From: Laetmonice hystrix
Taxonomy: Eukaryota
NCBI GenBank assembly: GCA_965235115.1
Contig: OZ249437.1
Location: forward strand, 16,182,001 to 16,246,000
Direction: 5' to 3'
Length of the DNA stretch: 64,000 nucleotides
The notes under the pieces were generated by a model. The model was not told the DNA's origin, searched no databases, and saw only the letters and a program-made list of their open reading frames with translations. Below are positions 9,018 to 62,700 of the stretch, one piece after another; position 1 is the stretch's first letter, and every line of letters starts with the position of its first letter. Both the position numbers and the translations under genes were made by a program.

Positions 9018-12000
9018 ATGGCGGGGGTTGTTCTGGAGACTCTGAGTAATCGCAAACTGATTACACTTGCGGTGACGATCTTCGTGGTGTTGGTCGTATT
9101 CTTCCTCATCGGTGGGTTGATAGGTAAGTCGAGTGGACCATTTCTTATTCTTACACCGCACTCGTAGATCTCCTAGGCATCTCAGGATTGCTTTGATTCG
9201 TTTTAAACTTTAGCGTAGCATCTAAATAGGACACTGTTTGCCTGCTAAACAGATTTGTTTTGAAACGACCTGGGTCAAATAGTCTGTGTTATTCCGCGGA
9301 CCCTCTGACCGGGTGCACTGGGCCAGACACAGTCGGCGGCGAGCCGCGCTGAGGCCGCGGGTTCTGACGGCGTTCGTCACAGACGAACTCGGTCAAGGCT
9401 GGCAGTGCTCACCCGGGCATGTGGACGCTGTGCAGCAGCGCGTCTAATGACTGACAGAAAGCTAGCCAGAGCTCTGTCCGTTCTGTAACAAGGCAGGCTA
9501 CAAGTTGAAGAGGTACCCAGGGGGAGGTCCCCCCCCCCGCCCCAACAAAACAAAATAGCTGACCCAAGTTGAAGTTGCCCATGTTTTATTGTTTAGTATG
9601 AACCACGTTTGTCAGATTTCTTACATGGAACCCCCCACCCCACCCCTCAGCCCAATCATGGGTACAGTCTTTTAGGCAGTTCCGAGAAGCGCTTTTGATA
9701 TCCGCTACTGACAATCTTCAGGCATATCCTGGATATGTAAAAGGATGGTCGATCTGTCGAGCAATCATCCGTGTTTTATCCATATAAAGCTTAGAACTCA
9801 ATGTCAATTCATTTGTTTGTGATGTGCCAAAGTTTACTGGTCGGATTTTGGCCAGTTCCGATACACTTCCGGTAGTTGCGAGAAACGCCATCTCGTGAAA
9901 AGATGCCGGCGATGAGGGCCCGTTTCAAGATGTTATCGTGCCATATTATGGGCCTAATAAACCACTACATTATGGTAAATGAGCTTTTCTTTGTCAAACT
10001 TTTGATTTTTCATAGTAAGACAGACGAGTACGAGTACACCTACAAGCGCTGTGGATGTGGGCATCCATCTTTGCATACAAATTTGCATGTCACTAGATGG
10101 CGTGTAGATCTACGGTCCTACACGCCATCTAGGCATGACTTATCGCAACTACCTGAATTGCCACACGAGCATTTATGCTGCTAATATTCTGGCACTACGT
10201 GTAAACATCATACAACTTTGCCAGTTTATTGTAGTGGTATTGTCACTTCACCTTAGCAAAAAAGAAGGTTAAGCTCAGTTTGGTTTTGGAGAAACGGTGC
10301 TCCAATGTTCGAAGCTCCCGTTTTGCGTCAGCGCCCGCTAATGTGTGCCGTCCGCAACTGGATGTAACCTGCTGTGTCACGCGAACACGGATGGCCAAAA
10401 TATCGCGATTTTTTCATCAGAGCCAGAAAATATGTAAGGCTTTACTACCCTGACATCAAATATGTGTCAGAATGAAATCTTTCAAAACTACGCCTGAGCG
10501 AATCTCACATTTCTCGCAACTACCTAATTCTCGGAACTGCCTAAAAGACTGTACAGCCGTACAGCACTACAGTACAGCCAGGCCTTGCAACCCTAACCTG
10601 AACGTACATTCTCAACTTGCCATTGGCACCAAGTTTTCTCTCTCTTTTTTTCTTCTCATTTCAGAATCCTTGACCCTATTCTGTATTAGTTAATGAAATT
10701 TAGGAAAACTTTGTTCTGAAAATAAAAGGTCCTTGAATCCAAGGCAAGAGGCAGGGCAGTGCAGAAATTGCAAAGCAAAATGTAAACGAATCATCTAGGA
10801 CTAGGGTGCGTTTCAATAAGGAAAGATGTCTTTGCCGAAAGAGTCTTTCAAAAGACGTCTTTTCGGGACCAGTGTTAAAGATTGTGGAAACACCACGTCG
10901 CCGCAAAGACTCTTTGGGGGTTCCCTGAGGGTCTCAAAGAGTCTTTTGGGCTTCATAGAAACGCACCCAAGTCTTCCTCAAATCAGTCCAATTACGTGGG
11001 CGTCTGCAGGGGGGCAAGGGGGCAGCCCCCCGGATCATCCGCCACCTCCACGTTTCTGTTGCCTTATTAAGTTCACATATGATTTTCGTCAAGTTTGCCC
11101 CTAAAATATTTCCTGCTGATGCCCATGTCGAGTTATGATATCAGGGGCGGATCTAGGGTCTATATTCAGGGGGGGTCCGAGGGGGGTCCAGCATAAAAAG
11201 GGCAAATCGAGGGGGGGGGGGGGTCCGTTGTAAAACCAAAAGGCATTTTGGTTATAAAAAATTAAATTTGGCAAATTTGAGGGGGGGTCCGGACGTCGCC
11301 GACACCCCCCTGGATCCGCCACTGTGATATAGATAATACGGATAGCATATTGGGAAAAGAAAGTTTAAGAAATGCCACACTGGGAGTGGGACGATGCAGT
11401 CAGTCTTTCAGAGTGACAGAGGTGCTGTATTAACTTGCATTAATAAAACACGGCATCAATGACACTTTGGTAGGCACCCAGTCCCAGGTAAGATCGGTGC
11501 AGGGTTGGGTAACATTACAATCGATGGCACAAGATTATAGAATAATACTGATGTGTGAACAGAAAGCTGTGGATCTGACTGTGGTGATGTGTTCAACACA
11601 GCATAGTTATTGATTGGTGGTCACTGAAGCCATCCGTATAATGTGTCCCTAGGGGTCAGTGAGAAATGGGCGTATTCTAGATCAGAGTCCAGATGGCTGA
11701 TACCTCGCCCCCTAGTGTACACCACAGGGAGTACTCGGTCTACAGACACAGAGTAAGCTGAGCAATTTGTCTCTGTCTTTATGGTTTACTCATGCATGCT
11801 AATTGGGTGGCAGGAGACACAGAGTGCTGTTGGTGACTAATAAAGTATAATAAACCAGCTCCCCTCTCCCCAGAATTCCAACATGGGGGGGGGGGGGGGG
11901 GGGTAGGTACCCGAAGAGAACGGCAGGCATGCAATTGCATGAACACCATCACACAATTTGTAAAATCAATCTTGGTACGCAAAATCGCAAATTAAAATCA

Positions 12001-15000
12001 AAGTTACCTGCCATCTCTTGCCTGTATCAGGACATTGTGGGAGGGGAATTCATCTTCAGTTTTACTGCAAACAAAATTTCCAGTTACTTAACAGCTTGCA
12101 TGGGAAGAGAGAAAAGTAAGCAGGTTTCTCACCAGAGATTTACGACAGCATAGGGGGACCGGAGGGGTGAAACCTCCCCCCCCCCCCCCTCCCAAGCTCT
12201 GGTAATTTAGGCTATTGTAGAGCCTTATCTTGCAGTCTAGATCTAAGCCAGATGAGAAAGGTTTGCTAAATTGGACAGTGAGTAATTTGAGTAAACAATC
12301 AACATTTTACCAGTATTCCTGTGGGTTCTGTTAAATTTAAACAAGTTTTTACCAAGTACATGAATACACAACGTAGCAACCCAGTATGCAGAAAAAGGCT
12401 GGCGAGAACACTGGTATGATTAAGAATTCTTTCCAGTTTTTTTTAAACGACAGTATAATTTATGATATATGCTCTCATTCATGGTTTTCTTTTCAGCGCC
12501 AGCCCCATCAACAGTAACTCCGATCTTGGGAACCAAGTGTTTGGATATTGGGAAACACAGACACAAGCAAGCATGGTTCACATCGAGAGGTCCGGGGAAC
12601 TGCAGCCGAGTCTCACATTTAGACGACAAACGCATCATGGAGGAAGCAATCACAACCAATCAGATTGTTTTCACGTTCCAGTTCCCACTACCACGTCAAC
12701 ACATGGAACTGGACATGTCTCGATGGTTTCAGACCATTCTAACAGTGCTACAAGTTGACGTGGATTACAGCACTAAGGCACCGATGAGTGAGTCAAGTTT
12801 TATGTATAATCTGCCAGTGAACTGTTTTACAAGTTCTGGTTTTGCTAGGGAGGGGACACTTTCACCTTGCAATACATCTAGGCCTACAGTGTTACTCAAC
12901 TTACTGCTATGTATTGTACTGATAGCCAGTTACTGGCAGTTAGATTTTAATTTATCAGGTTGGGTGTCCAATTTTAAGCCAGAATTAACAGGTTTGCTTC
13001 CTTGAATATTCCTCAATTCAGCAAATTATACAAACTTTTACAGGAACTGCTTTTCAAGCTTTGAACTACATTATGTTTTATGAAAATGATTTCATAGTGT
13101 TCACCCAGGATTTTATCATTTTTTAGCAGGTGGAAAAGCCTTGCTCACTATGGATGTACGCCTGGGTTATCGAAACAAGGGGGAAGAGAATTGGACTGAA
13201 ATTGTACGGTCAACGGAGGAAAGAAATCTCAGATGTGAAGTGCAGCAGGTAATCAAAAATATTGGTTTTAAATAAATCAATAAGTGATAATTTATCATTT
13301 ATTTTAAACTAACACACACACAAAACTTTGGGACTTGAAACTTGCAGGACTGATAAAAATGTAGAGATTACAGTTCTAAAGAAAAGGTCTTTTCAGGGGG
13401 GGAAAAAGTTCTCCGCTGACAAGATTCTACCTCTCCGATATCTGAATATCTTCTGCTCTGATGTGTACACACACTTAACAAGATTGATTGGATGCAGATT
13501 ATTAACATGGTGATTATGTACTAACGTTTTCTTTCCCTCAATGGTTGTCTATTTTTGCTTGCCTTTGCCTCATAGAATGGGACTTCTGTCCATGCGGTAA
13601 GTTTTGAAAGTGTTATGCTGAATATAGGTCTGAAAAATACAAGAGAAAGTTCTGATACTCTGTAATGTTACAAAGTAATGCTACGACTGTTAGACAGCTC
13701 CAATGTTATGTTTCTATACATAGCTGCTTGAAATCTAGGAAAAGTGTGCACAGAATGATTGGTGTACATGTTGTACATATTTATACACAAAGGTCTTAGA
13801 ATATATTAAGGGGTGGTGGCCAGCATAAGAATTAGGGTCTCTAAAGAAAAAGTGAATGCTGCCCCCCTTCCCCCACAAAAAACTCTCAAAGCGAACAATG
13901 GTGAACTGACTCTTTAGGGGAACTATGTGTTTAAAAACTTGTGAGAACCTTCCCTTTGGCAGCATGGAATATGCCAAAAATCCCTCAAAGGCTAATAAGG
14001 AAAGGGTTACAGCCATGGTTCTGGGAAAAAGAATGGGTAAAATTGGTGAAAATTATATGTAGGTTCTAAACAACACTTGTACGAAACAATTCCACTTGTC
14101 TGCATGTCAATGAAATACATTGATTTGAAAAGCAAAGTACATAGACGTGTCATTTCTCTTACTTGACATTGCAAACAGAATGGAACGCTCATTCAAGTGG
14201 TAAGTACAGGTCTACAAAACTGCCAATTTAGTTACTCATCACCTATCATTTTAAATACCCGGTAGCAAGAAACATAATTGGGCTGCTAGAAAAGATCTAG
14301 CTCTGAGACAATTTGCAAAGATTATCACAAATATGCGTGCTATGTGCATTTTTGCCTTAACTCCTGGGTCATGAATAAATTTTGTACATTTTCACAATGG
14401 TAATTGACCCCAGCCAGTAGTACTACCAATATTGTATACCGAATATCACATGTACTATGTAGTGGTAAAGGTTCATTGAAGACCCAAAAATCGGATTTTT
14501 TGGACGCAGAGTTCAGCGACTGTCTTTGCTGACTGATACAAAAATAGAGAATATCATCACAGTTGAACTAAGAATCCAACTCGACTCCTCATTTATATTA
14601 GAACTGTTTGTGGATGATAATAACAACCTTGTTGACCTGACTAGTCCCGGACCCCTGATATAATTTGTGTACCCTGTCCTCGCCCCAGAATGGCACGTTT
14701 ATCGAGGTAAGTCTCCCGTTGAGTTGGAGGAATTACTAGTTATTGTTAGCAGAGCTGTTGTCCTAGTTATATAAAATAGTTTGACATTTGTGGTGCACAT
14801 GTAACTGTAGATCATCTATCATTCTGTAAAAAAACTCGGAATTGAAACTCACAGAGCTGCTGTCCCAAGATAGATTAGACTAGATTTTATTGACGAAAAC
14901 TGAATACAACTTACAAGGCAAGGCGATTATCTGACTTTTCATAATTCTAGATACAGACTTTGCTATATATGGTAACGCAGAACTTTCAAAAAGTGTATGC

Positions 15001-18000
15001 AGCAGGGCTCATAATTTAAATGTTTTGTTTAATCAAGGGAAAGCAGCTCTGGACAGTGAGCATTGAGAATGAGTCCCTGATCAAATTAGAATATCATATC
15101 ACATAAATTATGACATCGTCTCCAATATCAGACTCAATATTCACTTCATTTCCTGTGACAAGGTGGACATCACCAATGTTTTGTATTTTGCCAAGGACTA
15201 TCAGCACTTGTCCAAGATAGTACCCCTTCTAGCGTGCACCTGGTGCATCACTGCATGGATCTGTGCCTAGTACGATTTCTGATTTTGTCTAGAATCAGTT
15301 TTATGGCTTGTTAATTTGAATCTGTCAGGCTGTCACTAGTAGCACTGCACTGGTCATGTGCTCACAGTACGAGTAATTTGTTGTTCCCCTTTGTTTGGTC
15401 AAGGTTGTAATATCAGGAAGGTAATTACCAAAGTTAACATTGATGAGTGATACAGATTCTGATCCAAGTCACTCAAAGTTCATGTGGTAACTAATAGAGA
15501 GGTTTCACCACACGTTTTGCACCGTACGTGAGGCAAGGTCACGACCTGACCACCGGTACAGGTTCCGTCAGGCAGAGTTGTTTTACTATGAGTCCCTCGA
15601 ACGCTCTAGCCTAGACCCCTGTGCATTGGGCACAGTTTAGTTTAAGTTAGGACAGAGCTGGTCAGGAGGCAAAATGTGCTCAGTTTAATTCCATATTATC
15701 ACTTATTTCCAACCATGGTTTACATGTCAAACACTTGAACTCAACATACATGTATGTTTTTATGGTACATACGTGTTAAGGTTATTCTGCAATTTAATCT
15801 TATATTTAAAAAAAAATTTTTGGGTACACGGTACTGGTAAACTCGCCTCCAGACGTCCGATGCATGGTCTTTACGGGTACCTTTATCAGATGAGTGCACA
15901 TTTCGGTCAAAGTTGTGTCACCCGTCAGTCTACCCGTACCCGTTCGGACCTGCAAAACCTCGCTAATATTTAAAGGTGGGGCCAGGTAGGCAGACAGGAA
16001 TTGAATTGAAATGTACGTTTTTTCCAAAGAGTTTTGGCTGTGGCAGTTCATCTAATGTTCTCTCCTCCTGTCGTGGGTTTTAAAATGAGATACAGTGAAG
16101 TGATTGGTGTCGATTTATCATAACTTGGAGCATAAGTTGGTAATGTACAATATATCTGAGACTCCGAGGGATTGTGCATTGTAAAACTTGGAGTCAGATC
16201 GGATGTAAAACTTGAGTAATAATAGTTTGACAAACTTAGACTGTTACAGAAATTGTAAGACTGTTCATTTTACTTTGTGCTTCATTTTCGAACAAGGTGA
16301 TTTTTTGAAGGCTTTTGGTCCTTATCTATTTCTTGAAACTTTCTTGTGACTTTGAATAGTTTTTTATTTCTTTTATGAAATAATTGTGATTAATATTTTA
16401 ATATATTAGTAACACAGGCAGCAAATTTTAACAAAAACTTGCTAGAGCTGGAGTCAAATACTAAATCTTGGTTTTTAAAGATACATGTATAAAGTAAATT
16501 GTGAATTCTGTTCTCTCTAAATCTCCTTCAGACCGCAGAGGATTACCCGATGAAATGTGACATCTTGCCATTCTTTGAGCTCGGGAGCTCACACCATGAT
16601 TTCTACCTCGTGAACATCCGACTCCCTGTTCATGTTGAGTCTGGAATGAACATCGATATTGGAAAAATAAAGGACTTGTGGCTTGTTGTGAGTAGACTCC
16701 AAGTAATATTGTATTTGAGAATTGCCCTTAACTTGCTTTTATCTTTGGTTGAAAAACTGGCTCATCTCAATAAAAGGCCATGGGGCAGAGTTAGAAGAAG
16801 TTTTAGCTGCAGGTTATTATACTTTATATCATATAGTGATCTTGATATGATGATATTAGGCTAAACATGTTTTGTTATTTTAATGTAAATCCCCATGATT
16901 GTGACCCAGGAGATACACCAGAACGGAGGGTTCACAAAGGTTTGGTTGTCGATGAAGACTGTCGTCTTTCCCCTGCTCCTTGTCATCCTCTGCTGGTTCT
17001 GGAAGCGGATTGTACAGCTTGACCGCACATCCATGCTGCTAGAACGGTTTGTGCACATTGCCTTTAGAATCAACTAAAACTCCTTGTAGCACTTCTAGAA
17101 TGTATTGTTGAATTGAAGTTTAGACATTTTTGTTACTGGGAGTTTCTGACATGGTAAGTTACAAAATGTGCCTTTACTTTACAGGACCTTGTTTGCCCTC
17201 GGACTCGTGTTGAGTCTCCAGAACTGTAAGTGTAAAACGTCCTAGAAACCATGATCTGCTGCACATTAGTTTTGTCGCAGCTTTTGATTTGGAAAATATT
17301 ATTAGATATTTTCACTCCCAATTTCCATGAGCGTCTCTACCGTGAGTGATATGACTAAGGGTGGTAATGTATTTTTTGCCCGGGCAGTACCTCTGGAATG
17401 GCTGACTCTCCATTTCTACATGCCGTACATGATGCTGCTAGGCGACATCCGTCAAGGTCTCTTCTATGCCATGCTGCTATGTTTCTGGATTATTTTTACT
17501 GGAGAGCACATGATGGTAGGTGCTATTGTTACTTTGGTGTTTCCCAATATGACATTTCTCAAACATTAAACAGTATTACCAATAATGTATACATTTAATA
17601 AAGAATAAGTTTTTTTTCTTTACCTATACACATGAGTTCAAGACACTCCCTGTGGTATTGTAAAATTTCAGAAGAAAGAGACAATAGATTTTAGCAAACT
17701 GTGTGAAGCATAGATTGTAATTGACCTATATAATATATGTGTGACATATTTCAGGATCAGATTGAGAGAAACCGACTGTTCATGTACTGGAAACATCTTA
17801 GTGCTGTCATCTTTGGCTGCATTTGTCTGTTCGTCTTTGAGATGTGTGAAAGGTACGTTCTTTGATTGATCGTGTCATTACCATTACAATCTGTCATCTG
17901 GATTTTCAAAGAATGTGAAACTATGTACAATTTTAATATTGATTGATGGTGTCCCAAGTTAAATGTTGTTAACCTTATGTTTGCAGACAAATTTTGCTCT

Positions 18001-20820
18001 TTGCACTGAGTTGTTTCTTGTCTTGTTTTTCTTGCCCAGTTTTGCAGTTTTACTATGTGATTCTCATGACTTTTCTAACATTTGTTTCAGAGGCGTTCAA
18101 CTCACCAACCCATTCTACAGTATCTGGGTCACAGAAACTGGAACAACGCTTGCCGTATCCTTGAACACTATTATGTCATAGTGAGTGCCAAAGTTTCATT
18201 TGGTACTACTGAGTTTGAGCTTGCGTGACCTTCAAAAGTCAATTACACATAATTTAGAAAACATAAAATGTCCTTAACTTATTTGTTAGCTGGCATTCAT
18301 TGTCCTAGCGGGAGCGGCAGCATGTCTCTATTTCCTCTTCCTTTGCTACATGATCTTCCGTGTCTTCCGCAACATCTCAGCCAAGAAGAGCGCATTGCCC
18401 TCAATGAACAAAGCGCGTAGAAAATACTACATGGTAAGTGTGTCCCCAGAAATCTTAAAATTTTACATTGTACTCCTCAAAGATTAAATTTTTAACTGTA
18501 GCTCATGTAGATGACAGACGTTTACATTATTGGAGTGCTGACGTAATTGCAGGCAAGATACTTTAGTAAAGCTTCAACTACCTTGATGTGAAATTATCAT
18601 GATGGTTGCTGAGGTCCCAGGCCACCCTGGAACATTCACTAAGATGATAAACACAGGACATAACCAGTTCTTGAAACCAATTTTCTCATTATTTTCCGCA
18701 TCTCTCGGGGCAATAAGTTGATCTGTATTATGTTGCTGATTGCAGGGTCTGATCTACCGGTTCCGCTTCCTGATGGTGGTGACCCTGGTGGCTGCGGCGG
18801 TGACGGTGATCTTTTTCATCATCTCGCAGGTCTCGGAGGGACAGTGGAAGTGGGGTAGTGAGGAACCACAACATTTCACTCTCGAGTACACATCAGCTTT
18901 CTTCACCGGTATGGCACTCTACTCTCTACCCTAGTTTTTCCTCCCTAGGCTCTTTGTTACAAAATCATTTTCTATGGATTTGAATAATCTTGAAAACTCA
19001 TTCCTGGATCCTCAGTAGCAGGTTTGCCCTAATGTGCACTAATGTGACACGTTTACCATTTCTTTCAGAACATTTTTCTCTCAAACAAATGATCTCCCAG
19101 AATTTTCACATTTTATACTAGCCTCTAATTGCTTGTGACTATATTGTGCTTGTATGAAAGGAATTAAATACTGTCAAACAGTTACTGAGTTATAAATGGT
19201 GTATTTTTATTGAAGATCTCATTGTCATGTCTTAATGGTTGTCTTGATGTATTAAGTAATGTTATTAAGTATGTAATTATTTTAGTAAACTGATAATAAT
19301 TACCGTACATTAATTGTCAGTTTTTTATTAGACACGCATACCTTCAATATACATGTAGTTGTATTTTATAGTGAAAATAAAATAGTGAAATGAAAATAGT
19401 GAAAGACATTGGTGTCTCAGTAAGAAAATGTGTAATGACAAGTGTACCCTAAATTTGAGCCCCAAGTTATTCAGGTTACCATGATAACATTGTATTGATT
19501 GGTTCAGGTGTGTATGGTATGTGGAACCTGTACGTGATTGCTCTCCTAATACTCTACGCCCCGTCACACAAACACATCACTGTGCTCGAGACAGGTAGGT
19601 GGCTCTATATAAAAAACAGGGATTTGAAGTTGTCTTGGATCAGTTGGTTTTTTAATCAAATGAACCAACATAACCTTTTTTAAAATCGTTAAAATGAGTA
19701 GCATCATTCATTTCTCTACAAATTTTTTTATTAATGATATCTTAGCAAGACGTTTATTTCCTTTCTATGTCTCCCGGGGGTTGTGCTGCAAAAATAAAAA
19801 GATTCAGCGAGTGACTTGCCTACCTGCTTGGTGGATGATCAGTCTCAACTCCTGGGCCCGGTTTTTTTGTTTTGTGCTTACCGTGAGCTGAGAAGTTGTG
19901 AGCTGAGCAGCATTTTACTGCTCACGTGAGCAGTGCTCACCGTGAGCAGCTATTCGGGTTTTTTTGTTTAATCTGAGCAGCTGCTCATGTGAGCACTTGC
20001 TCACGGTGAGCAAGACACCGTAACCAAGGATATATGACGGAACAGTCTATTGTCATCACTCAGAGAAGGTGACGTCACAGTACTTTTGGAACTATTATAG
20101 ACTTGAACAGTAGGGCCTCATTTCTAACGTCACAATGACAGCTGTGCCTGTGGCCGCGGTGTGACCCTGCCATGGCCAGAGTGGACACTGTCAGAGTATT
20201 TTCAGCAACAGGCTGCTCTCAAAATCCTTTTTAAATTCAGAAACGTTATATGCAGGCTTATGGAGAACAACATTCTGCTCCCCGTGGTCAAATTAAGTAA
20301 AAGAAAGGAAGACAAAATTTATGTAAATTTGAGTGAAATTCTCCCTTGCTCACCCTTGCTCACGACACCGTGAGCATCCTCCTTAGCTTGCTCACGTCTC
20401 ACGGAAATTTCGTGAGCAAATCTCACGAAAAGTGCTGCTCACAAAAACAAAAAAACCGGCGCGCTGTGCTCAGCCTGAGTCAGCTCACGAAAATGCTGCT
20501 CAGCTCACGAAAAGTGCTGCTCAGCTCACAAAAAGTAAACAAAAAAACCGGGCCCTGACCTCTAGACTAGCATAGAAACTAATGACAGTCGGATTGATTT
20601 AAAAGCTGACATCGTGGCGTATATTCGTTTGGCCATGCTCAGTGAAACCGTATTTTGTTATATCTCAAATTAATTTGTTTTAAAATACAAATAAAATTTT
20701 AAAATATGGTAAATGTTCTTTGTTACAGAAGAGAGCAATGAAGAAGAAGTGGAGTTCACAAACATCGCATCGGAAGCTTCGGTCTTGACGGCATTTGCCA
20801 AGAAGGCTGCTGCGGATTAA
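9018..20820 (+). CDS. WLS: Wntless (WLS/Evi/GPR177), Wnt secretion mediator
   Basis: Exons 9018-9123 ([17 protein letters not shown]...FFLIGGLI), 12497-12787, 13130-13248, [microexons 13576-13596, 14179-14199, 14689-14706], 16532-16687, 16910-17046 ([11 protein letters not shown]), 17185-17225, 17388-17515 ([25 protein letters not shown]), 17755-17852, 18091-18154 ([13 protein letters not shown]), 18290-18433, 18746-18908, 19508-19594 ([20 protein letters not shown]) and 20729-20820 (stop). Frame is continuous. Confidence 0.97.
10804..10968. mobile_element. 165-bp MITE in WLS intron 1
   Basis: TIRs GGGTGCGTTTC / GAAACGCACCC. The interior is made of AAAGA(G/C)TCTTT-like palindromic motifs. 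Confidence 0.6.
11142..11324. mobile_element. CAGGGGCGGATC-type MITE with 6-bp TSD
   Basis: TIRs CAGGGGCGGATC / GATCCGCCACTG; TGATAT is duplicated on both flanks. Confidence 0.8.
13576..13596 (+). CDS. WLS: WLS microexon 1 (21 nt, NGTSVHA)
   Basis: tttttgcttgcctttgcctcatag|AATGGGACTTCTGTCCATGCG|gtaagt; phase 0-0. Confidence 0.75.
14179..14199 (+). CDS. WLS: WLS microexon 2 (21 nt, NGTLIQV)
   Basis: cttacttgacattgcaaacag|AATGGAACGCTCATTCAAGTG|gtaagt; phase 0-0. Confidence 0.75.
14689..14706 (+). CDS. WLS: WLS microexon 3 (18 nt, NGTFIE)
   Basis: ccctgtcctcgccccag|AATGGCACGTTTATCGAG|gtaagt; phase 0-0. Confidence 0.75.
18155..18289 (+). other. U12-type (minor spliceosome) GT-AG intron in WLS
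   Basis: Donor GTATCCTTG; branch motif TCCTTAAC at 18271-18278, 11 nt before the end of the intron; no long polypyrimidine tract. Confidence 0.85.
19854..20555. mobile_element. About 700-bp TIR element in the last WLS intron
   Basis: TIRs GGGCCCGGTTTTTTTGTTT / AAACAAAAAAACCGGGCCC, with many subterminal GTGAGC/GCTCAC motifs. No clean TSD. Confidence 0.75.
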
Positions 20821-23439
20821 AGAAGCATGGTTTCCTCCTGGCTGATTTCTGCCTCGACATCCAGCAATAATTGGACATATATCAGTAAGATTCTTAGTGA
20901 TAGCTTTCAATTTTATCTGTATTATCATCATGAATAGATCATACTCTTAGGTGACTAGAATTTTTTACATGGTGTTGCAGATTTTTGCCAGAAATTAAAA
21001 ATATGTATTGTAGGCATCAGCCAGAGATTTCCCCAGATTCTAAAAGTCTTAAAATCTGTATAACTATGAGATTTGAATTTCTCCTTCTTCCTTTTTCTTA
21101 AATCATGTACACGTATTTGTATTGTCGGTTATGGACAGCTCGACCTTATGTTATACTGCCATTGTCACTGTGAATTATCCGATATCTTTGCTGCCGTGTA
21201 ATCAGCACTGGTAGAAAGGTTATCTACCACAATGACGTGTTGAAATCCTGCTGTCTCCATGAGTGGTTCTACAGGGGACCTGATGTCGTTAAGATGAAAC
21301 AGATTTTTTAAAATCAAAAGCTCTACAACAGACTTTTTTTAGAACCCTTTTTCACAAAATGTGCAACGACTTTCAGTGTGCACCTATTTTGTGATCTTCA
21401 TGTGCCAAAGGTTTGCTGGACAAAAAAAAGTCCCATTTGACAGGGTCCAGGATGCAATAAACCAGAGATCAAATCAGACTAAGAAAAGAGACCATCTAAT
21501 TTCATTAGATGAGGAGAGAAATTCATGCATTATACGTTTGGCTATTTCCATGGAAATAGAAGAGAAAATGGAATCTCACTTGGTCTATGATACGTGTATT
21601 TAAAATGTTGTGTCGAACCGTCAGATGTATAGTTCCATATTGATGTAGTTACTATTTCAATTACTATTATTTATAATTTTATTATCGCATACATGTTCCC
21701 TACAATAATATGGTGAGGGTTCTTGTATAGGCCAGGTAGTAAATGTATTACAGTTTGTTCGTGTAGTGTTGGTATCTGCCTTTATCATCAGAGGAGACGT
21801 TTGAGGGTAGAGATTGTGGGTTTGTGCGACCGTCTGGAACCCTCTCTAAGTTGAAGGCATCAATCGTTGTGATATCTTCAACACAACGTCCTTAGTGACG
21901 ACTTAACCAGAGGCAAAGGCGTCGGATACCAAGTGTGGTTCTCGCACCGTTGTCAGCATCCACGCAGCATTTATTTTCTGTTAAAGGGTATTTAAAGTTT
22001 GTTTTTTGAGCAACAAATTGGTGAGAGGACAGAATTTATTAATGAAAAGTATCGATTTGTTTTATTTTCATGAAATGGGCCAAATTTGAAGTAGGTAAGC
22101 TGTGACACTAACAGATAAAAGATTTACTAACGTGCATTTATTTTGAAGTTATAGATCACAATGTTATAATGATTGGTGAACATGTGGTCGCGTGGTGGAG
22201 AGGCCAGATTTGTCGTAGTTATAAGGCATGAATACATTCTTGTAAATAAGTGTTGTCTACTTGTAGATCAAAACAAAATGTATTCATTTTGTGAAATCAT
22301 GTCTGTTAGTACTGGTTTCGAAAAACCAGAATCAGTTGTATTTGTTTAAAAAAGTCTAAAGTTGAAAATGATAATGTGAAAATGATACAATTATATGGGG
22401 ATCTACCTGGTCACAGGGTCACAAATTTTCTGGATTAGGAATGGTTCCCTAATCACTTTATTTTTGTGCATCATGTTTATTTTTGTAATAAGAAATAATT
22501 TTTTGAGAAGGATTTGTTTTGACTTTGGTAATTAAGAGCATGGACACCCTGAACGTTGAGAAGGTCAGCTGGCCACAGATGGGGCAGGGTAGGATGGTGC
22601 TAGGATCTAAAACGCCAAAGAACACACCTTTATATATATATATCATTATATTGACAATAGTTTTGGCCCGTCAGCCTCAACAGGGTCAGTTACACCAATG
22701 CTAGCGACTAGAGTGGAAAACTTCTGCAGGGTACTTGGAAGGGTTAAATTACAAAAACAAATCTTTAATAGAAAACATAATATTGAATTCATTAAAATAT
22801 ACCAGCTGCTTTAGTACGATTTATATTTTGAAAAGCAGATTTATGACAAGTAAGAAAACCAAAATCTCATGTTGCAGAATTGTATTCAAGAATTCATGAA
22901 TGAAAACGAACAAGATTTATAGGAAACCATGACATAACGAGGGTGCATGATGCTCGAGTCCCATTTTGTATGGCATGGTTTCTCGGAGGAATGACGTCGT
23001 GACTAAAAACTTTTTGATGACACGATATTCACAGGTATCACAATGGAATAAGTCTCCATGTACCCGGTATTCTAGAGACTATTTCAGGTATTGGAATGTT
23101 TAGAATGTCGGGCATTGTAAGGTACTTTTATGATGCTATTTCATCCATATTCTACTGTAGAGATTTATTGTAGAGATTATTTTTGAAATAAATAGATATA
23201 AATATCCTAAAGGCTGCTTTGACTTTATCTTGAGTAGTATTGATATGTTGAAGGCACTCATGCCCGATTTATTTATGAATCATATATTTATACCAGTCCG
23301 GTTTGTAGGCCACATTCCCTGGCTATGCACCACCTAGGTCTTCCACTGTGTCCTATAATACAATAAAGAAAGGGGATCCCTCCATATCTAATTATATACT
23401 GGTAATAGAATATATGAAGGGATCTATTACAGGGAATAT

Positions 23440-59700: not shown

Positions 59701-62700
59701 CCGCATGTTGGTACGGATGGCCGAGGCCATCGGCCGAGTAGTCCTGGCTGGTCGCGAAATGACCAGACTCGCTGGGTGGGTTTAAGTTATTTCCAACATG
59801 AATCTTAAATTCATTATTTACAGACCATGATGTATGATGAAGGCATTGTCTGTCATTGTTACTTTTCATGACTGTATATCATCAACCATATATGTTTTCA
59901 GGTTCACGGCTCGGGTCACAGAGTTCATGAGTGTCCTTGAAGATCTCAACAAGGGTAAATACGAGCGAACCATGATCACAGCGGAAAACAAGCAAGGATC
60001 AGGTACATCAGTCTTAGGAGGGATGTTTTAAAACGAGGATGCCTTTTCAAATGATCCCTTGAAATTGCAATAACAAAATATGTTCATGAAAATGTAAGAT
60101 TCAAAAGGTTTATTTCAGCAGAAACTGTTTCCTTTCATTTAGGTTAAAATTTGATGGTTATATAGAGTGATATTGATACCTTGAAATCACCAACACGTTG
60201 TTAAGTTAGGGAGGTGGAATGAACGTTTAAAAGTTGGTGGTGTTCTTACAGCAGAAAGCAAGTCAAGTTCTGCACTCCAGCCAGGCACTGGTGTCATTGT
60301 AAAACAAGACCACATCATCAAGTATGTATTTTGTATCTTTCTATTATCATGTCATATCAGTGTAGTCTTTCCTACTCTATAGTTAGCTAACACAGTGTTA
60401 GCCAAATTCTTTCTGCTATCAGTAAACTGGGCCTTTAAGATTTTAAGATACTTATTGAACCTGAAATACAAAAATATATATTCATTTAGAGGGAAAAAAG
60501 TCAGAACATTGATTGTTAAAGATGATTAGGTTCTAAATGAAGTTTCTCAACTGTTCTAGATTTGAACATGTGCCACTGGTGACACCAAATGGAGATGTGC
60601 TCGTCCAGGAACTAAACTTTGAGGTAAGTTACATAAAACTATTTCCTAACTGGTACGATGGGAAGTAATAAAAATTATCACTGATTTTATTAAATCAAAA
60701 GTGATAAAACATGTAGCGATGTGCTGCTATTGATGTAAATGGTCCATACAGCAATTTCTTCTGATCACTTTAAAAGAAATGAGTGATTTCTGCAAGTATT
60801 CGGTGCTACAGATTGTGTTGTGTTTAGAAATGATATTATTATTTTCCATCCCCAGATCACTTGCATGCAGAGTGGAGTGAATTGGTTGTATTCTCAGGTA
60901 ATATATACATGTAATTGTACTAATTGTAGTACTGTAATCAGGTAATATTCTCCACCACAGGTTTCATCTGGGAAGAATGTCTTGGTGTGTGGACCAAACG
61001 GATGTGGTAAAAGTTCTCTGTTCAGAATACTTGGAGAGGTAAGTCAGAGTTTCATATGATCTTTATGTTGCATACTAAAACACTATTTGGCACACTGGTT
61101 GCACTATTTGGCACACAGGCTTGCCTTCACACATGGTCCAGCTATTTCAGTATCCTCGATACCCTTGCACAAGTCGAAGTTGTTAATACTAGTGGTGGAT
61201 GAACAAACTACAGAATCAATTTGATTCATGGATTGACAGAGCCGAATAGTGATTGGTCAGAAACAAATTGATTGTGTTCATTTTCATACTCCGCTCTGCA
61301 TCTTTCCAATGTCTCATTGCAGCTGTGGCCACTCTTCGGAGGAACAATGACAAAACCAGACAGCAGAGAACTTTTCTACATTCCACAGGTAAAATTGATT
61401 AACTGTTTACTGTTAATATATTTCATAAAAAGGAATGAAATATTCTGAAACATGTGTCCAAACATATTTGAGAGACTGTGAATTTGTATTTGATATTACA
61501 GCGGCCTTACATGACACTGGGTACATTGCGGGAACAAGTCATCTACCCACACAACAAGACTGAGATGTTGAAGAAAGGGTTCAGTGATACTAAACTACAG
61601 GACATTCTAGAAAAGGTTAACATTCTATAGAAACCAGTGTAATTTACTCAGATTGATCAGTAGATGCTTTCAGTTAGATGTACGGTAACCTGGTACTGAA
61701 AGTTTCATTATTATTTTCTCTCAACATAATGAGTTTTGACGGTGTAGCATATTAAACGGATATTGATATTTTCCTTACACAGGTCCAGTTGTCCTACATC
61801 CTGGAGCGGGAGGGAGGATGGGATGCTGTACAGGTAACATGAATTGTCTGCTAAGACTACAAAGCTGTATTAAGTTAAACTATATGAAGATAAATTACCA
61901 GTACTATTTGAAATGTGGAATGGCAGCTTGTAGAAGGAAATAAAGGGAAAATAGTGATGTTTTGAAATATAGCCTACTTTATTTGTATTTTATTTTCAGG
62001 ACTGGATGGATGTCCTGAGTGGGGGTGAAAAACAGAGAATTGCTGTAAGTTATTTGGGAATAATGTCGGGTTGTTAGCAGAGAGTTAGAATTGTAATTCA
62101 TTGCAGGCAGTATGTTATGTGTGTCAGCTTGTTAGCATAGAGTTAGAATAATGTCAGCTTGTTAGCATAGTGTTAGGATTGTAATTCATTTCTGGAAGTA
62201 TGTTATGCGTGTCAGCTTGTTAGCATAGAGTTAGAATTGTAATTCATTGCAGGCAGTATGTTATGTGTGTCAGGTTGTTAGCATAGAGTTGGGATTGTAA
62301 TTCATTGCCGGCAGTATGTTATGTGTGTCAGCTTGTTAGAATAGAGTTAGAATTGTAATTCATTGCTGGAAGTATGTTATGTGTGTCAGCTTGTTAAGAT
62401 AGAGTTAGGATTGTAATTCATTGCTGGCAGTATGTTATGTGTGTCAGCTTGTTAGAATAGAGTTAGAATTGTAATTCATTGCTGGAAGTATGTTATGTGT
62501 GTCAGGTTGTTAGCATAGAGTTAGAATTGTGATTCATTGCTGGCAGTATGTTATGTGTGTCAGCTTGTTAGCATAGAGTCAGTTAGGATTGTAATTCATT
62601 GCCGGCAGTATGTTGTGTGTCAGCTTGTTAGCATAGAGTTAGAATTGTGATTTATTACTGGCAGTATGTTATGTGTGTCAGCTTGTTAGCATAGAGTTAG

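What the first reader, a model, noticed from the sequence alone, without database searches (positions are those of the whole stretch)
13576..14706. Three paralogous microexons in Wntless, each encoding an N-glycosylation sequon (NGT): a possible splice-controlled glycan switch
Seen in sequence: the 3.3-kb intron 13249-16531 holds three 18-21-nt segments, each bounded by AG and a perfect GTAAGT donor. All are phase 0-0 and all begin AAT GG(G/A/C) AC(T/G), giving NGTSVHA, NGTLIQV and NGTFIE. The third codon positions differ while N-G-T is kept, which suggests selection on the peptide. Microexons 1 and 2 have TGC motifs just upstream of the acceptor. Established: N-X-T is the N-glycosylation sequon; this position lies in a variable loop of the large luminal/extracellular WLS domain, just before the conserved C-D-I-L-P-F motif; intronic UGC motifs upstream of microexons are bound by SRRM4/eMIC-domain proteins in the neural microexon programme. 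Inference: tandem microexon duplication allows 0-3 extra glycans (up to 8 in-frame isoforms, or mutually exclusive choice), possibly tuning Wnt binding or trafficking by tissue. I do not know of this arrangement being described for WLS.
Basis: partly seen in the sequence, partly recalled or inferred. Interest (0 to 1): 0.85.

Follow-up and report, generated by a model that had tools for sequence, protein, structure and literature searches.

The report
Three NGT microexon candidates in Wntless
One intron of a marine worm's only Wntless gene (the receptor that carries Wnt signals out of cells) holds three tiny, related, perfectly framed mini-exons, each of which would add a sugar-attachment site to an exposed loop; the sequence says they are kept by selection, but no RNA data could show them in use.

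Summary
Intron 3 (13249-16531) of an intact, single-copy Wntless gene holds three segments of 21, 21 and 18 nt. Each has the form AG|AATGGNAC...|GTAAGT, is in frame, and has no stop codon (NGTSVHA, NGTLIQV, NGTFIE). They are the only three GTAAGT and the only three AATGGNAC on the sense strand of that intron. Genome-wide, 3 of the 7 pattern hits lie here. Their flanks no longer align, the region is single copy, and the copies differ at synonymous positions, so they look like old duplicates kept by selection. They would insert into the Cys-to-Cys luminal loop, which is 10-17 aa in 167 of 170 other WLS proteins.

Expression is unproven. The only RNA-like run (assembled contigs) confirms splicing of the neighbouring exons but does not bridge exon 3 to exon 4. 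Its exon-4 contig begins with letters that fit direct exon 3-exon 4 joining.

No counterpart exists in the orthologous intron of five relatives, in the closest relative's transcript, or in annotated isoforms of other lophotrochozoans.

Verdict: probably real, lineage-specific alternative cassette microexons. The glycan-switch and neural-control ideas remain inference. This is a new member of a known kind, of moderate interest.

The parts
9018..20821 (+). Wntless (WLS) coding region, 13 constitutive exons; the skip isoform is 542 aa and intact
   Evidence: Exons were mapped by tblastn with a WLS orthologue and by splice-site inspection. Pfam WLS_GOLD and WLS-like_TM hits occur only here in the genome for GOLD. 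RNA-like contigs confirm three joints: 12787>13127, 16687>16910 and 17225>17388.
13127..13248 (+). Exon 3, ending ...LRCEVQQ, with a weak donor CAG|GTAATC
   Evidence: (acceptor at 13127 confirmed by a spliced contig).
13249..16531 (+). Intron 3 (3283 nt, phase 0). Its position within the loop is conserved in Lineus, Ridgeia, Owenia and Capitella.
13519..13525 (+). TACTAAC, a perfect branch-point consensus 51 nt upstream of the M1 acceptor, followed by a long pyrimidine tract
   Evidence: Read directly.
13556..13568 (+). Three TGC motifs within 20 nt of the M1 acceptor (13556-58, 13560-62, 13566-68)
   Evidence: Read directly.
13576..13596 (+). Microexon candidate M1, 21 nt, NGTSVHA, AG|...|GTAAGT
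   Evidence: The heterozygous SNP 13581 G>A is synonymous (GGG>GGA).
14170..14172 (+). TGC motif 7-9 nt upstream of the M2 acceptor
   Evidence: Read directly.
14179..14199 (+). Microexon candidate M2, 21 nt, NGTLIQV, AG|...|GTAAGT
14689..14706 (+). Microexon candidate M3, 18 nt, NGTFIE, AG|...|GTAAGT. There is no TGC upstream; CTGAC and CTGAT branch-point-like motifs lie 35-50 nt upstream.
16532..16687 (+). Exon 4, starting [19 protein letters not shown]; it aligns to human WLS residues 177-222
   Evidence: donor at 16687 confirmed by a spliced contig.

Best explanation
The three segments are real, lineage-specific cassette microexons of Wntless. They arose by two old tandem duplications of one microexon inside intron 3.

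When the spliceosome includes one or more of them, 6-7 residues of the form N-G-T-x-(V/I)-(H/Q/E)-(A/V) are added per exon. They go into the loop between the third and fourth conserved cysteines of the luminal beta-sandwich (GOLD-like) domain. The loop then grows from the usual 12 residues to as many as 32, and each insert brings one N-x-T sequon into the ER lumen.

The default product is the skip form, which has the loop length seen in nearly all animals. Inclusion is regulated and probably minor or tissue-restricted.

Shown here: the anatomy, the statistical excess, the selection-like pattern among the copies, and the location in the protein.
Inferred: that the segments are spliced in, that they are glycosylated, and that UGC-binding SRRM-type factors control M1 and M2.
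For: Exact, non-random anatomy:
- The only 3 GTAAGT and the only 3 AATGGNAC in the intron are paired at 18-21 nt, each after AG, in frame and without stops.
- 3 of the 7 genome-wide pattern hits are here.

Selection signature:
- Flanks of +/-100 nt are not alignable.
- The 1.4-kb region is single copy, so it is not a transposon.
- Even so, AG, AAT-GG-AC and GTAAGT are identical in all three copies.
- The fourfold-degenerate positions differ (GGG/GGA/GGC; ACT/ACG/ACG), and the remaining residues keep their class (S/L/F, V/I/I, H/Q/E, A/V) with different codons.

Splice signals:
- All three have the perfect donor GTAAGT, which only 3 of the gene's 12 constitutive donors have. Exon 3's own donor is weak, GTAATC.
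- Branch-point consensus sequences and pyrimidine tracts lie upstream.

Polymorphism: the one heterozygous SNP inside a microexon is synonymous, like all five SNPs in the neighbouring exons.

The site tolerates change:
- The Cys-Cys loop is 10-17 aa in 167 of 170 WLS proteins, but 23-43 aa in three.
- 10 of 170 carry a sequon there, including NGT in a limpet.

Skip form: it has the modal loop length of 12 aa. The RNA-like contig over exon 4 starts with one unaligned letter plus CAG. That matches the end of exon 3 (GCAG) and not the end of any microexon (GCG, GTG, GAG).

Precedent: NLGN1 splice insert B carries N303, whose glycan lowers neurexin affinity.
Against: - No read or contig shows any microexon in RNA. 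The one RNA-like run has no contig across 13221-13248 to exon 4.
- No counterpart was found in the orthologous intron of Lineus, Ridgeia, Owenia, Capitella or an unnamed relative.
- The closest relative's transcript (69% identity) is the skip form.
- No annotated isoform of six other lophotrochozoans differs at this loop.
- M3 lacks UGC motifs.
- The loop is not among the WLS-Wnt contact residues named in the papers read, so an effect on Wnt binding has no support.
Confidence: 0.6

Rival explanations
1. Mutually exclusive choice. The three paralogous microexons are alternatives, so a transcript takes none or exactly one. This would give four loop variants rather than up to eight combinations.
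For: Tandemly duplicated exons of near-equal length with homologous peptides are the classic source of mutually exclusive exons (established knowledge). The three peptides share one pattern.
Against: None of the usual enforcing devices is visible. The lengths are multiples of three, so double inclusion keeps the frame. The inter-exon introns are 582 and 489 nt, so there is no steric block. The repeat search found no docking site complementary to three selector sequences. The exons are optional additions to a loop that is complete without them.
Confidence: 0.15
2. Non-functional pseudo-exons. The resemblance is a relic of a duplication or a coincidence, and the spliceosome ignores the segments.
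For: There is no RNA support. They are absent in all reachable relatives. The skip form is the form seen in the closest relative.
Against: Flanks have diverged beyond alignment, while the splice sites and the first and second codon positions of N-G-T stay identical in all three copies. Three perfect donors and acceptors, all in frame and stop-free, are very unlikely without selection.
Confidence: 0.12
3. RNA-level element rather than coding exons. The AG|AAUGGNAC...|GUAAGU units would act as decoy or helper exons that recruit U1/U2 and a sequence-specific factor. They would control how fast or how well intron 3 (with its weak GTAATC donor) is removed, and would rarely or never end up in mRNA.
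For: Perfect U1 sites sit inside an intron whose own donor is weak. The conserved AATGG-AC could be a protein-binding motif. No inclusion is seen in RNA contigs.
Against: A decoy needs neither an open frame, nor a length divisible by three, nor conservation of amino-acid class along the rest of the unit. Variation falls exactly on synonymous positions.
Confidence: 0.08
4. Constitutive exons. All three are always included, so the true protein has a 32-residue loop and there is no switch.
For: All three have strong splice signals.
Against: The RNA-like contig over exon 4 is preceded by CAG, which fits exon 3 and not M3, which ends GAG. The skip form matches the loop length of 167 of 170 other WLS proteins.
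Confidence: 0.05

Closest known systems
Neuroligin-1 splice site B insert (carries N303)
   Same: A short alternatively spliced insert in an extracellular or luminal domain whose main feature is an N-glycosylation sequon. The glycan changes ligand affinity and maturation (PMC10679506).
   Different: That case is a single insert in a vertebrate synaptic adhesion protein, and both its inclusion and its glycan are experimentally shown. Here there are three paralogous inserts in a Wnt cargo receptor, and neither inclusion nor glycan is shown.
Alternative exons born by tandem exon duplication (cassette or mutually exclusive arrays; for example the two agrin z-site microexons, which combine to give 0, 8, 11 or 19 residues)
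   Same: Adjacent, homologous, frame-neutral small exons in one intron that can give several in-frame isoforms (established knowledge; the agrin example is from my own knowledge and was not checked here).
   Different: Each unit here starts with the same sequon. The array is unknown for WLS and absent from every other WLS gene examined.
eMIC/SRRM4-dependent neural microexons
   Same: Length of 27 nt or less, a multiple of three, strong donor, and UGC motifs between the pyrimidine tract and the acceptor for M1 and M2. The genome has one SRRM_C match.
   Different: M3 has no UGC. Neural inclusion is untested. Classic neural microexons are deeply conserved, whereas these are lineage-specific.
Known WLS isoforms (human variants including the C-terminal WlsX; predicted isoforms in molluscs and nemerteans)
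   Same: Alternative splicing of WLS exists (PMC10112924).
   Different: The described and annotated variants change the C-terminus, the N-terminus or the exon 7/8 junction. None changes the luminal Cys-Cys loop.

Membership tests
Wntless / WLS | Luminal WLS_GOLD domain (PF21883) followed by the WLS-like 7TM domain (PF06664) in one intact reading frame | tested here: met
   PF21883 hits on exons 2, 3 and 4 and nowhere else in the genome. PF06664 hits on later exons. The spliced model is 542 aa without stops and 69% identical to the nearest WLS. Exon 4 matches human WLS structures at E about 4e-12.
Cassette microexon | Very short (about 27-30 nt or less), bounded by AG and GT, length a multiple of three, no stop codon | tested here: met
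   21, 21 and 18 nt; AG|...|GTAAGT; open in phase 0.
Cassette microexon | Found in mature mRNA in some transcripts and absent from others | tested here: inconclusive
   Only assembled contigs of one RNA-like run were available. Neighbouring junctions are confirmed, but exon 3 to exon 4 is not bridged. The start of the exon-4 contig fits the skip form. A junction-peptide search found nothing because this species' RNA is not in the protein collection.
Cassette microexon | Conserved in related species | tested here: not met
   No candidate in the orthologous intron of Lineus, Ridgeia, Owenia, Capitella or the L008 relative. All of these are distant (69% identity or less), and no close relative was reachable.
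eMIC/SRRM4-type neural microexon | UGC motif(s) close upstream of the acceptor | tested here: inconclusive
   Three UGC within 20 nt for M1, one at -9 to -7 for M2, none for M3.
eMIC/SRRM4-type neural microexon | An eMIC-bearing SRRM gene in the genome | tested here: met
   One PF15230 (SRRM_C) match, 29.9 bits against a cut-off of 27, at G000:C18:20459758-20459838. It is a single short hit and was not examined further.
eMIC/SRRM4-type neural microexon | Inclusion enriched in neurons | not testable with these tools
   No tissue-resolved RNA runs exist for this organism in the index.
Mutually exclusive exon cluster | A device that forbids joint inclusion (frame incompatibility, too-short intron, or docking/selector RNA pairing) | tested here: not met
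   All lengths are multiples of three. The introns between the exons are 582 and 489 nt. No one-to-three complementary docking site appeared among the inverted repeats.
N-glycosylation site | N-x-S/T with x not Pro, in a segment that faces the ER lumen | tested here: met
   N-G-T in all three. The segment lies in the luminal domain by alignment to human WLS residues 36-227.
N-glycosylation site | A glycan is actually attached | not testable with these tools
   This needs a PNGase F or Endo H shift, or glycoproteomics.

The most novel reading that the evidence does not exclude
Splice choice sets the number of N-glycans (0 to 3) on the luminal domain of the only Wnt cargo receptor of this animal. 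The result would be a graded, tissue-specific change in WLS folding, trafficking or Wnt hand-over: a combinatorial glycan dial built from three duplicated microexons.
Probability: 0.2. Interest if true: 0.7.

Novelty: new member of a known kind. Interest (0 to 1): 0.45.

Why it matters
WLS is single-copy and essential for secretion of all lipidated Wnts. Its luminal loop is nearly fixed in length across animals, and which residues of WLS carry N-glycans is still unknown even in vertebrates (PMC10112924). A natural array that can lengthen that loop and add up to three sequons would show that the loop is a tunable site. It would also give a ready-made set of isoforms for testing whether glycans on WLS affect its maturation or Wnt release. 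For splicing evolution, it is a clean case of microexon birth by tandem duplication, with selection visible on the peptide. The value is limited because the array seems confined to one poorly sampled worm lineage and its expression is not yet shown.

Tried and rejected
RNA evidence:
- Two run searches found only four runs of one sample, all held as contigs. X4 behaves as RNA (spliced joints).
- The single read-laying run shows no contig across the exon 3-exon 4 junction, so expression is neither shown nor excluded.

Junction peptide search: a 65-aa peptide (exon 3 tail + M1-M3 + exon 4 head) against the 5.8-billion protein set found no candidate sharing words. Even the known exon-4 contig peptide was not found, so this species' RNA is not in that set and the blank is uninformative.

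Close relatives:
- The best hit is an unnamed Logan transcript at 69% (P0142, run SRR6255879). No paper mentions that run.
- The representative search with exon 2 found nothing above 62%.

Orthologous introns in L008, Lineus, Ridgeia, Owenia and Capitella: no candidates.

Annotated isoform pairs in Tubulanus, Haliotis (two species), Babylonia, Pomacea, Biomphalaria and Ostrea: all differences lie elsewhere in the protein.

Transposon or repeat origin: rejected. The 1.4-kb region is single copy and there is no fourth degenerate copy in the window.

A second WLS gene that could carry a comparable array: none; WLS_GOLD hits only this locus.

Docking/selector RNA pairing for mutually exclusive splicing: only short, chance-level inverted repeats.

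Placing the loop on the WLS-Wnt interface: the tools give no coordinates. Text searches of two papers for human loop residues 171-177 and Cys162/179 found none named as contacts. This is a weak negative only.

Folding the included isoform: not done, because a spliced sequence has no reference and would have had to be typed in full.

Full report
**What is in the sequence**

The window carries one Wntless (WLS) gene on the + strand. I mapped 13 constitutive exons from 9018 to 20821. Spliced together they give an intact 542-aa protein that starts [10 protein letters not shown] and ends AFAKKAAAD. Pfam WLS_GOLD matches exons 2, 3 and 4 and nothing else in the 627-Mb assembly. WLS-like_TM matches the later exons, plus one other locus on another contig that has no GOLD domain. 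WLS is therefore single copy. Exon 4 aligns to residues 177-222 of the human WLS cryo-EM chains at E about 4e-12.

Exon 3 ends at 13248 (...LRCEVQQ, donor CAG|GTAATC). Exon 4 starts at 16532 ([19 protein letters not shown]). The intron between them is 3283 nt and phase 0.

**The three segments**

| Segment | Coordinates | Length | Peptide |
|---|---|---|---|
| M1 | 13576-13596 | 21 nt | NGTSVHA |
| M2 | 14179-14199 | 21 nt | NGTLIQV |
| M3 | 14689-14706 | 18 nt | NGTFIE |

Each is preceded by AG and followed by GTAAGT.

**Is it more than chance?**

Yes, by several measures:
- On the sense strand the intron contains exactly three GTAAGT and exactly three AATGGNAC, and they pair one to one.
- The full pattern is not expected in shuffles of the window.
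- In the whole genome it occurs seven times, three of them here within 1.14 kb. A reversed control pattern also occurs seven times, all scattered.
- The bare architecture (AG, open frame of 18 or 21 nt, GTAAGT) occurs three times in only 4 of 5000 dinucleotide-preserving shuffles of the intron, before the shared AATGGNAC is counted.
- No fourth, decayed copy exists in the window.

**Signs of selection**

- The 100 nt on either side of the three units do not align with each other.
- The 1.4-kb region is single copy in the genome, so the units are not parts of a repeat family or a recent duplication.
- Against that saturated background, AG, AAT, GG-, AC- and GTAAGT are identical in all three copies.
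- The two fourfold-degenerate positions differ (GGG/GGA/GGC and ACT/ACG/ACG).
- The rest of the peptide keeps its residue class with different codons: S/L/F, V/I/I, H/Q/E, A/V.
- The DNA contigs of the sequenced individual show six heterozygous SNPs in the coding parts of the laid stretch, five in exons 2-4 and one in M1 (13581 G>A). All six are synonymous third positions. One SNP is weak evidence on its own, but it points the same way.

**Splice signals**

- All three units have the perfect donor GTAAGT. Only 3 of the gene's 12 constitutive donors have it, and exon 3's own donor is the weak GTAATC.
- M1 has a TACTAAC branch-point consensus 51 nt upstream, a long pyrimidine tract and three TGC motifs within 20 nt of the acceptor.
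- M2 has one TGC at -9 to -7.
- M3 has CTGAC/CTGAT branch-like motifs but no TGC.

**RNA evidence**

Only four runs, all from one sample and one study, hold this locus, and all are kept as assembled contigs. One of them, X4, has 59 million letters and its share of sampled words rose from 0.26 on a half-intronic query to 0.77 on the last exon plus the sequence just downstream of the stop codon (presumed 3' UTR). X4 behaves as RNA: its contigs skip 12788-13126, 16688-16909 and 17226-17387 at GT..AG borders, which confirms three of my exon junctions.

X4 has no contig over 13221-13248 and none in the microexon region. Its exon-4 contig begins with one unaligned letter followed by CAG and then exon 4. 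CAG is the end of exon 3 (GCAG) and also the end of the intron (TCAG). The unaligned first letter speaks against the intron, whose letter there would have aligned. None of the microexons ends in CAG (they end GCG, GTG, GAG).

So the little there is fits a direct exon 3-exon 4 join, meaning the skip form exists. Nothing shows or excludes minor included forms. Contigs drop rare variants, and a contig made of 18-21-nt pieces could hardly be laid. A search with a junction peptide found nothing at all, not even the known exon-4 peptide, so this species' RNA is not in the protein collection.

**Comparison with other species**

The nearest WLS proteins are:
- an unnamed transcript from a public run, 69% identical;
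- the nemertean Lineus longissimus, 62.6%;
- then molluscs and annelids at 55-63%.

Notes from earlier agents call this genome a polychaete. My data agree only as far as "lophotrochozoan".

The nearest transcript has the skip-type loop CEVQKDEDGYPMKC. I fetched the orthologous gene from Lineus, Ridgeia, Owenia, Capitella and an unnamed relative on a metagenome contig. The intron sits at the same place in the loop in all of them, with lengths from about 57 nt to 2.4 kb, and none holds a comparable candidate. Predicted isoform pairs in Tubulanus, two Haliotis species, Babylonia, Pomacea, Biomphalaria and Ostrea all differ elsewhere: at the C-terminus, the N-terminus or the exon 7/8 junction.

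The array is therefore lineage-specific as far as can be seen. All comparators are distant, so this neither supports nor refutes function.

**Where the inserts would go**

The site lies between two invariant cysteines of the luminal beta-sandwich domain, Cys162 and Cys179 by my count from the alignment to the human chain. Among 170 full-length WLS proteins the intervening loop is 10-17 residues in 167, with modes at 12 and 14, and 23, 31 and 43 residues in the other three. Ten of the 170 carry an N-x-S/T sequon there, including NGT in a limpet. The skip form here has 12 residues; full inclusion would give 32.

The human luminal domain (residues 36-227) has two disulfide bonds. That the two cysteines flanking this loop pair with each other is my inference.

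The WLS residues named as Wnt3a contacts are Thr40, Met101, Met103, Phe107, Ile113, Gln115, Glu205, Val222, Ile224 and Gln454. None lies in the loop, and text searches for loop residues in two papers found none. An effect on Wnt binding is therefore unsupported. An effect on folding, quality control or trafficking is as likely.

An alternative to the glycan reading is structural. N-G is a strong turn former, and T-x-(V/I)-x-(A/V) is strand-like, so the units could add short hairpin elements. The two readings are not exclusive.

**Mode of use**

Nothing enforces mutual exclusion. The lengths are multiples of three, the introns between the units are about 500-600 nt, and no docking site pairs with three selectors. 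Because the loop is complete without them, independent cassette use is the simplest reading, but only long reads can tell.

**Regulation**

The UGC motifs before M1 and M2, and one SRRM_C (eMIC-type) match in the genome, fit the neural microexon programme. This is circumstantial, and M3 lacks the motif.

**Known and new**

Alternative exons born by tandem duplication are a well-known kind. A splice insert whose key feature is an N-glycan is known from neuroligin-1 site B. WLS isoforms described so far concern other parts of the protein, and the residues of WLS that are glycosylated are still undefined. No paper in the library links Wntless with such microexons.

I therefore class the array as a new member of a known kind. 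My estimate is about 0.6 that these are real alternative cassette microexons, and about 0.8 that they are spliced in at all, in any mode. The glycan-dial idea is an attractive but untested extension.

Noticed in passing
window 15358-16053: This part of WLS intron 3 has DNA contig depth of 400-1900 against about 50 elsewhere, with many loose ends. It is a high-copy repeat (probably a transposon insertion), and RNA-like contigs also hit it.
   Followed up: no
window 16207-16350: An unspliced RNA-like contig (145 nt, depth 4.7) lies in single-copy intron sequence about 180 nt upstream of exon 4, while the rest of the intron has no RNA contig. It could be pre-mRNA, an unannotated transcript or low-level DNA carry-over.
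   Followed up: no
window 62087-62493: Four copies of a near-identical 29-nt match spaced 116-146 nt apart: a tandem repeat array near the end of the window.
   Followed up: no
G000:C6:13915585-13918392: A second locus matches WLS-like_TM (PF06664) over four exons but has no WLS_GOLD match. It is probably a TMEM181-type paralogue, not a second Wntless.
   Followed up: partly
P0319 vs P0159 (Tubulanus polymorphus WLS isoforms X1/X2): The nemertean's predicted isoform X1 has a 14-aa insert (DLTVDLETIVHKSK) at the junction that corresponds to exon 7/8 here, in a cytoplasmic or TM-proximal segment. Pomacea X1 has a 7-aa insert in the C-terminal tail.
   Followed up: partly
window 14750-14763, 14852-14871 and 15032-15051: Two direct copies of CAGAGCTG(T/C)TGTCC just downstream of M3 are both complementary to one site at 15032-15051 (20 nt, 85%). 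This may be chance or a small hairpin-forming element.
   Followed up: no
G000:C18:20459758-20459838 (- strand): The only match in the genome to SRRM_C (PF15230, 29.9 bits), the C-terminal region that contains the eMIC domain of SRRM3/4-type splicing factors.
   Followed up: no
P0163 (unnamed Logan transcript, 61% identical): This WLS has a 31-residue Cys-Cys loop with an N-F-T sequon. It is an independent lengthening of the same loop in another lineage.
   Followed up: partly
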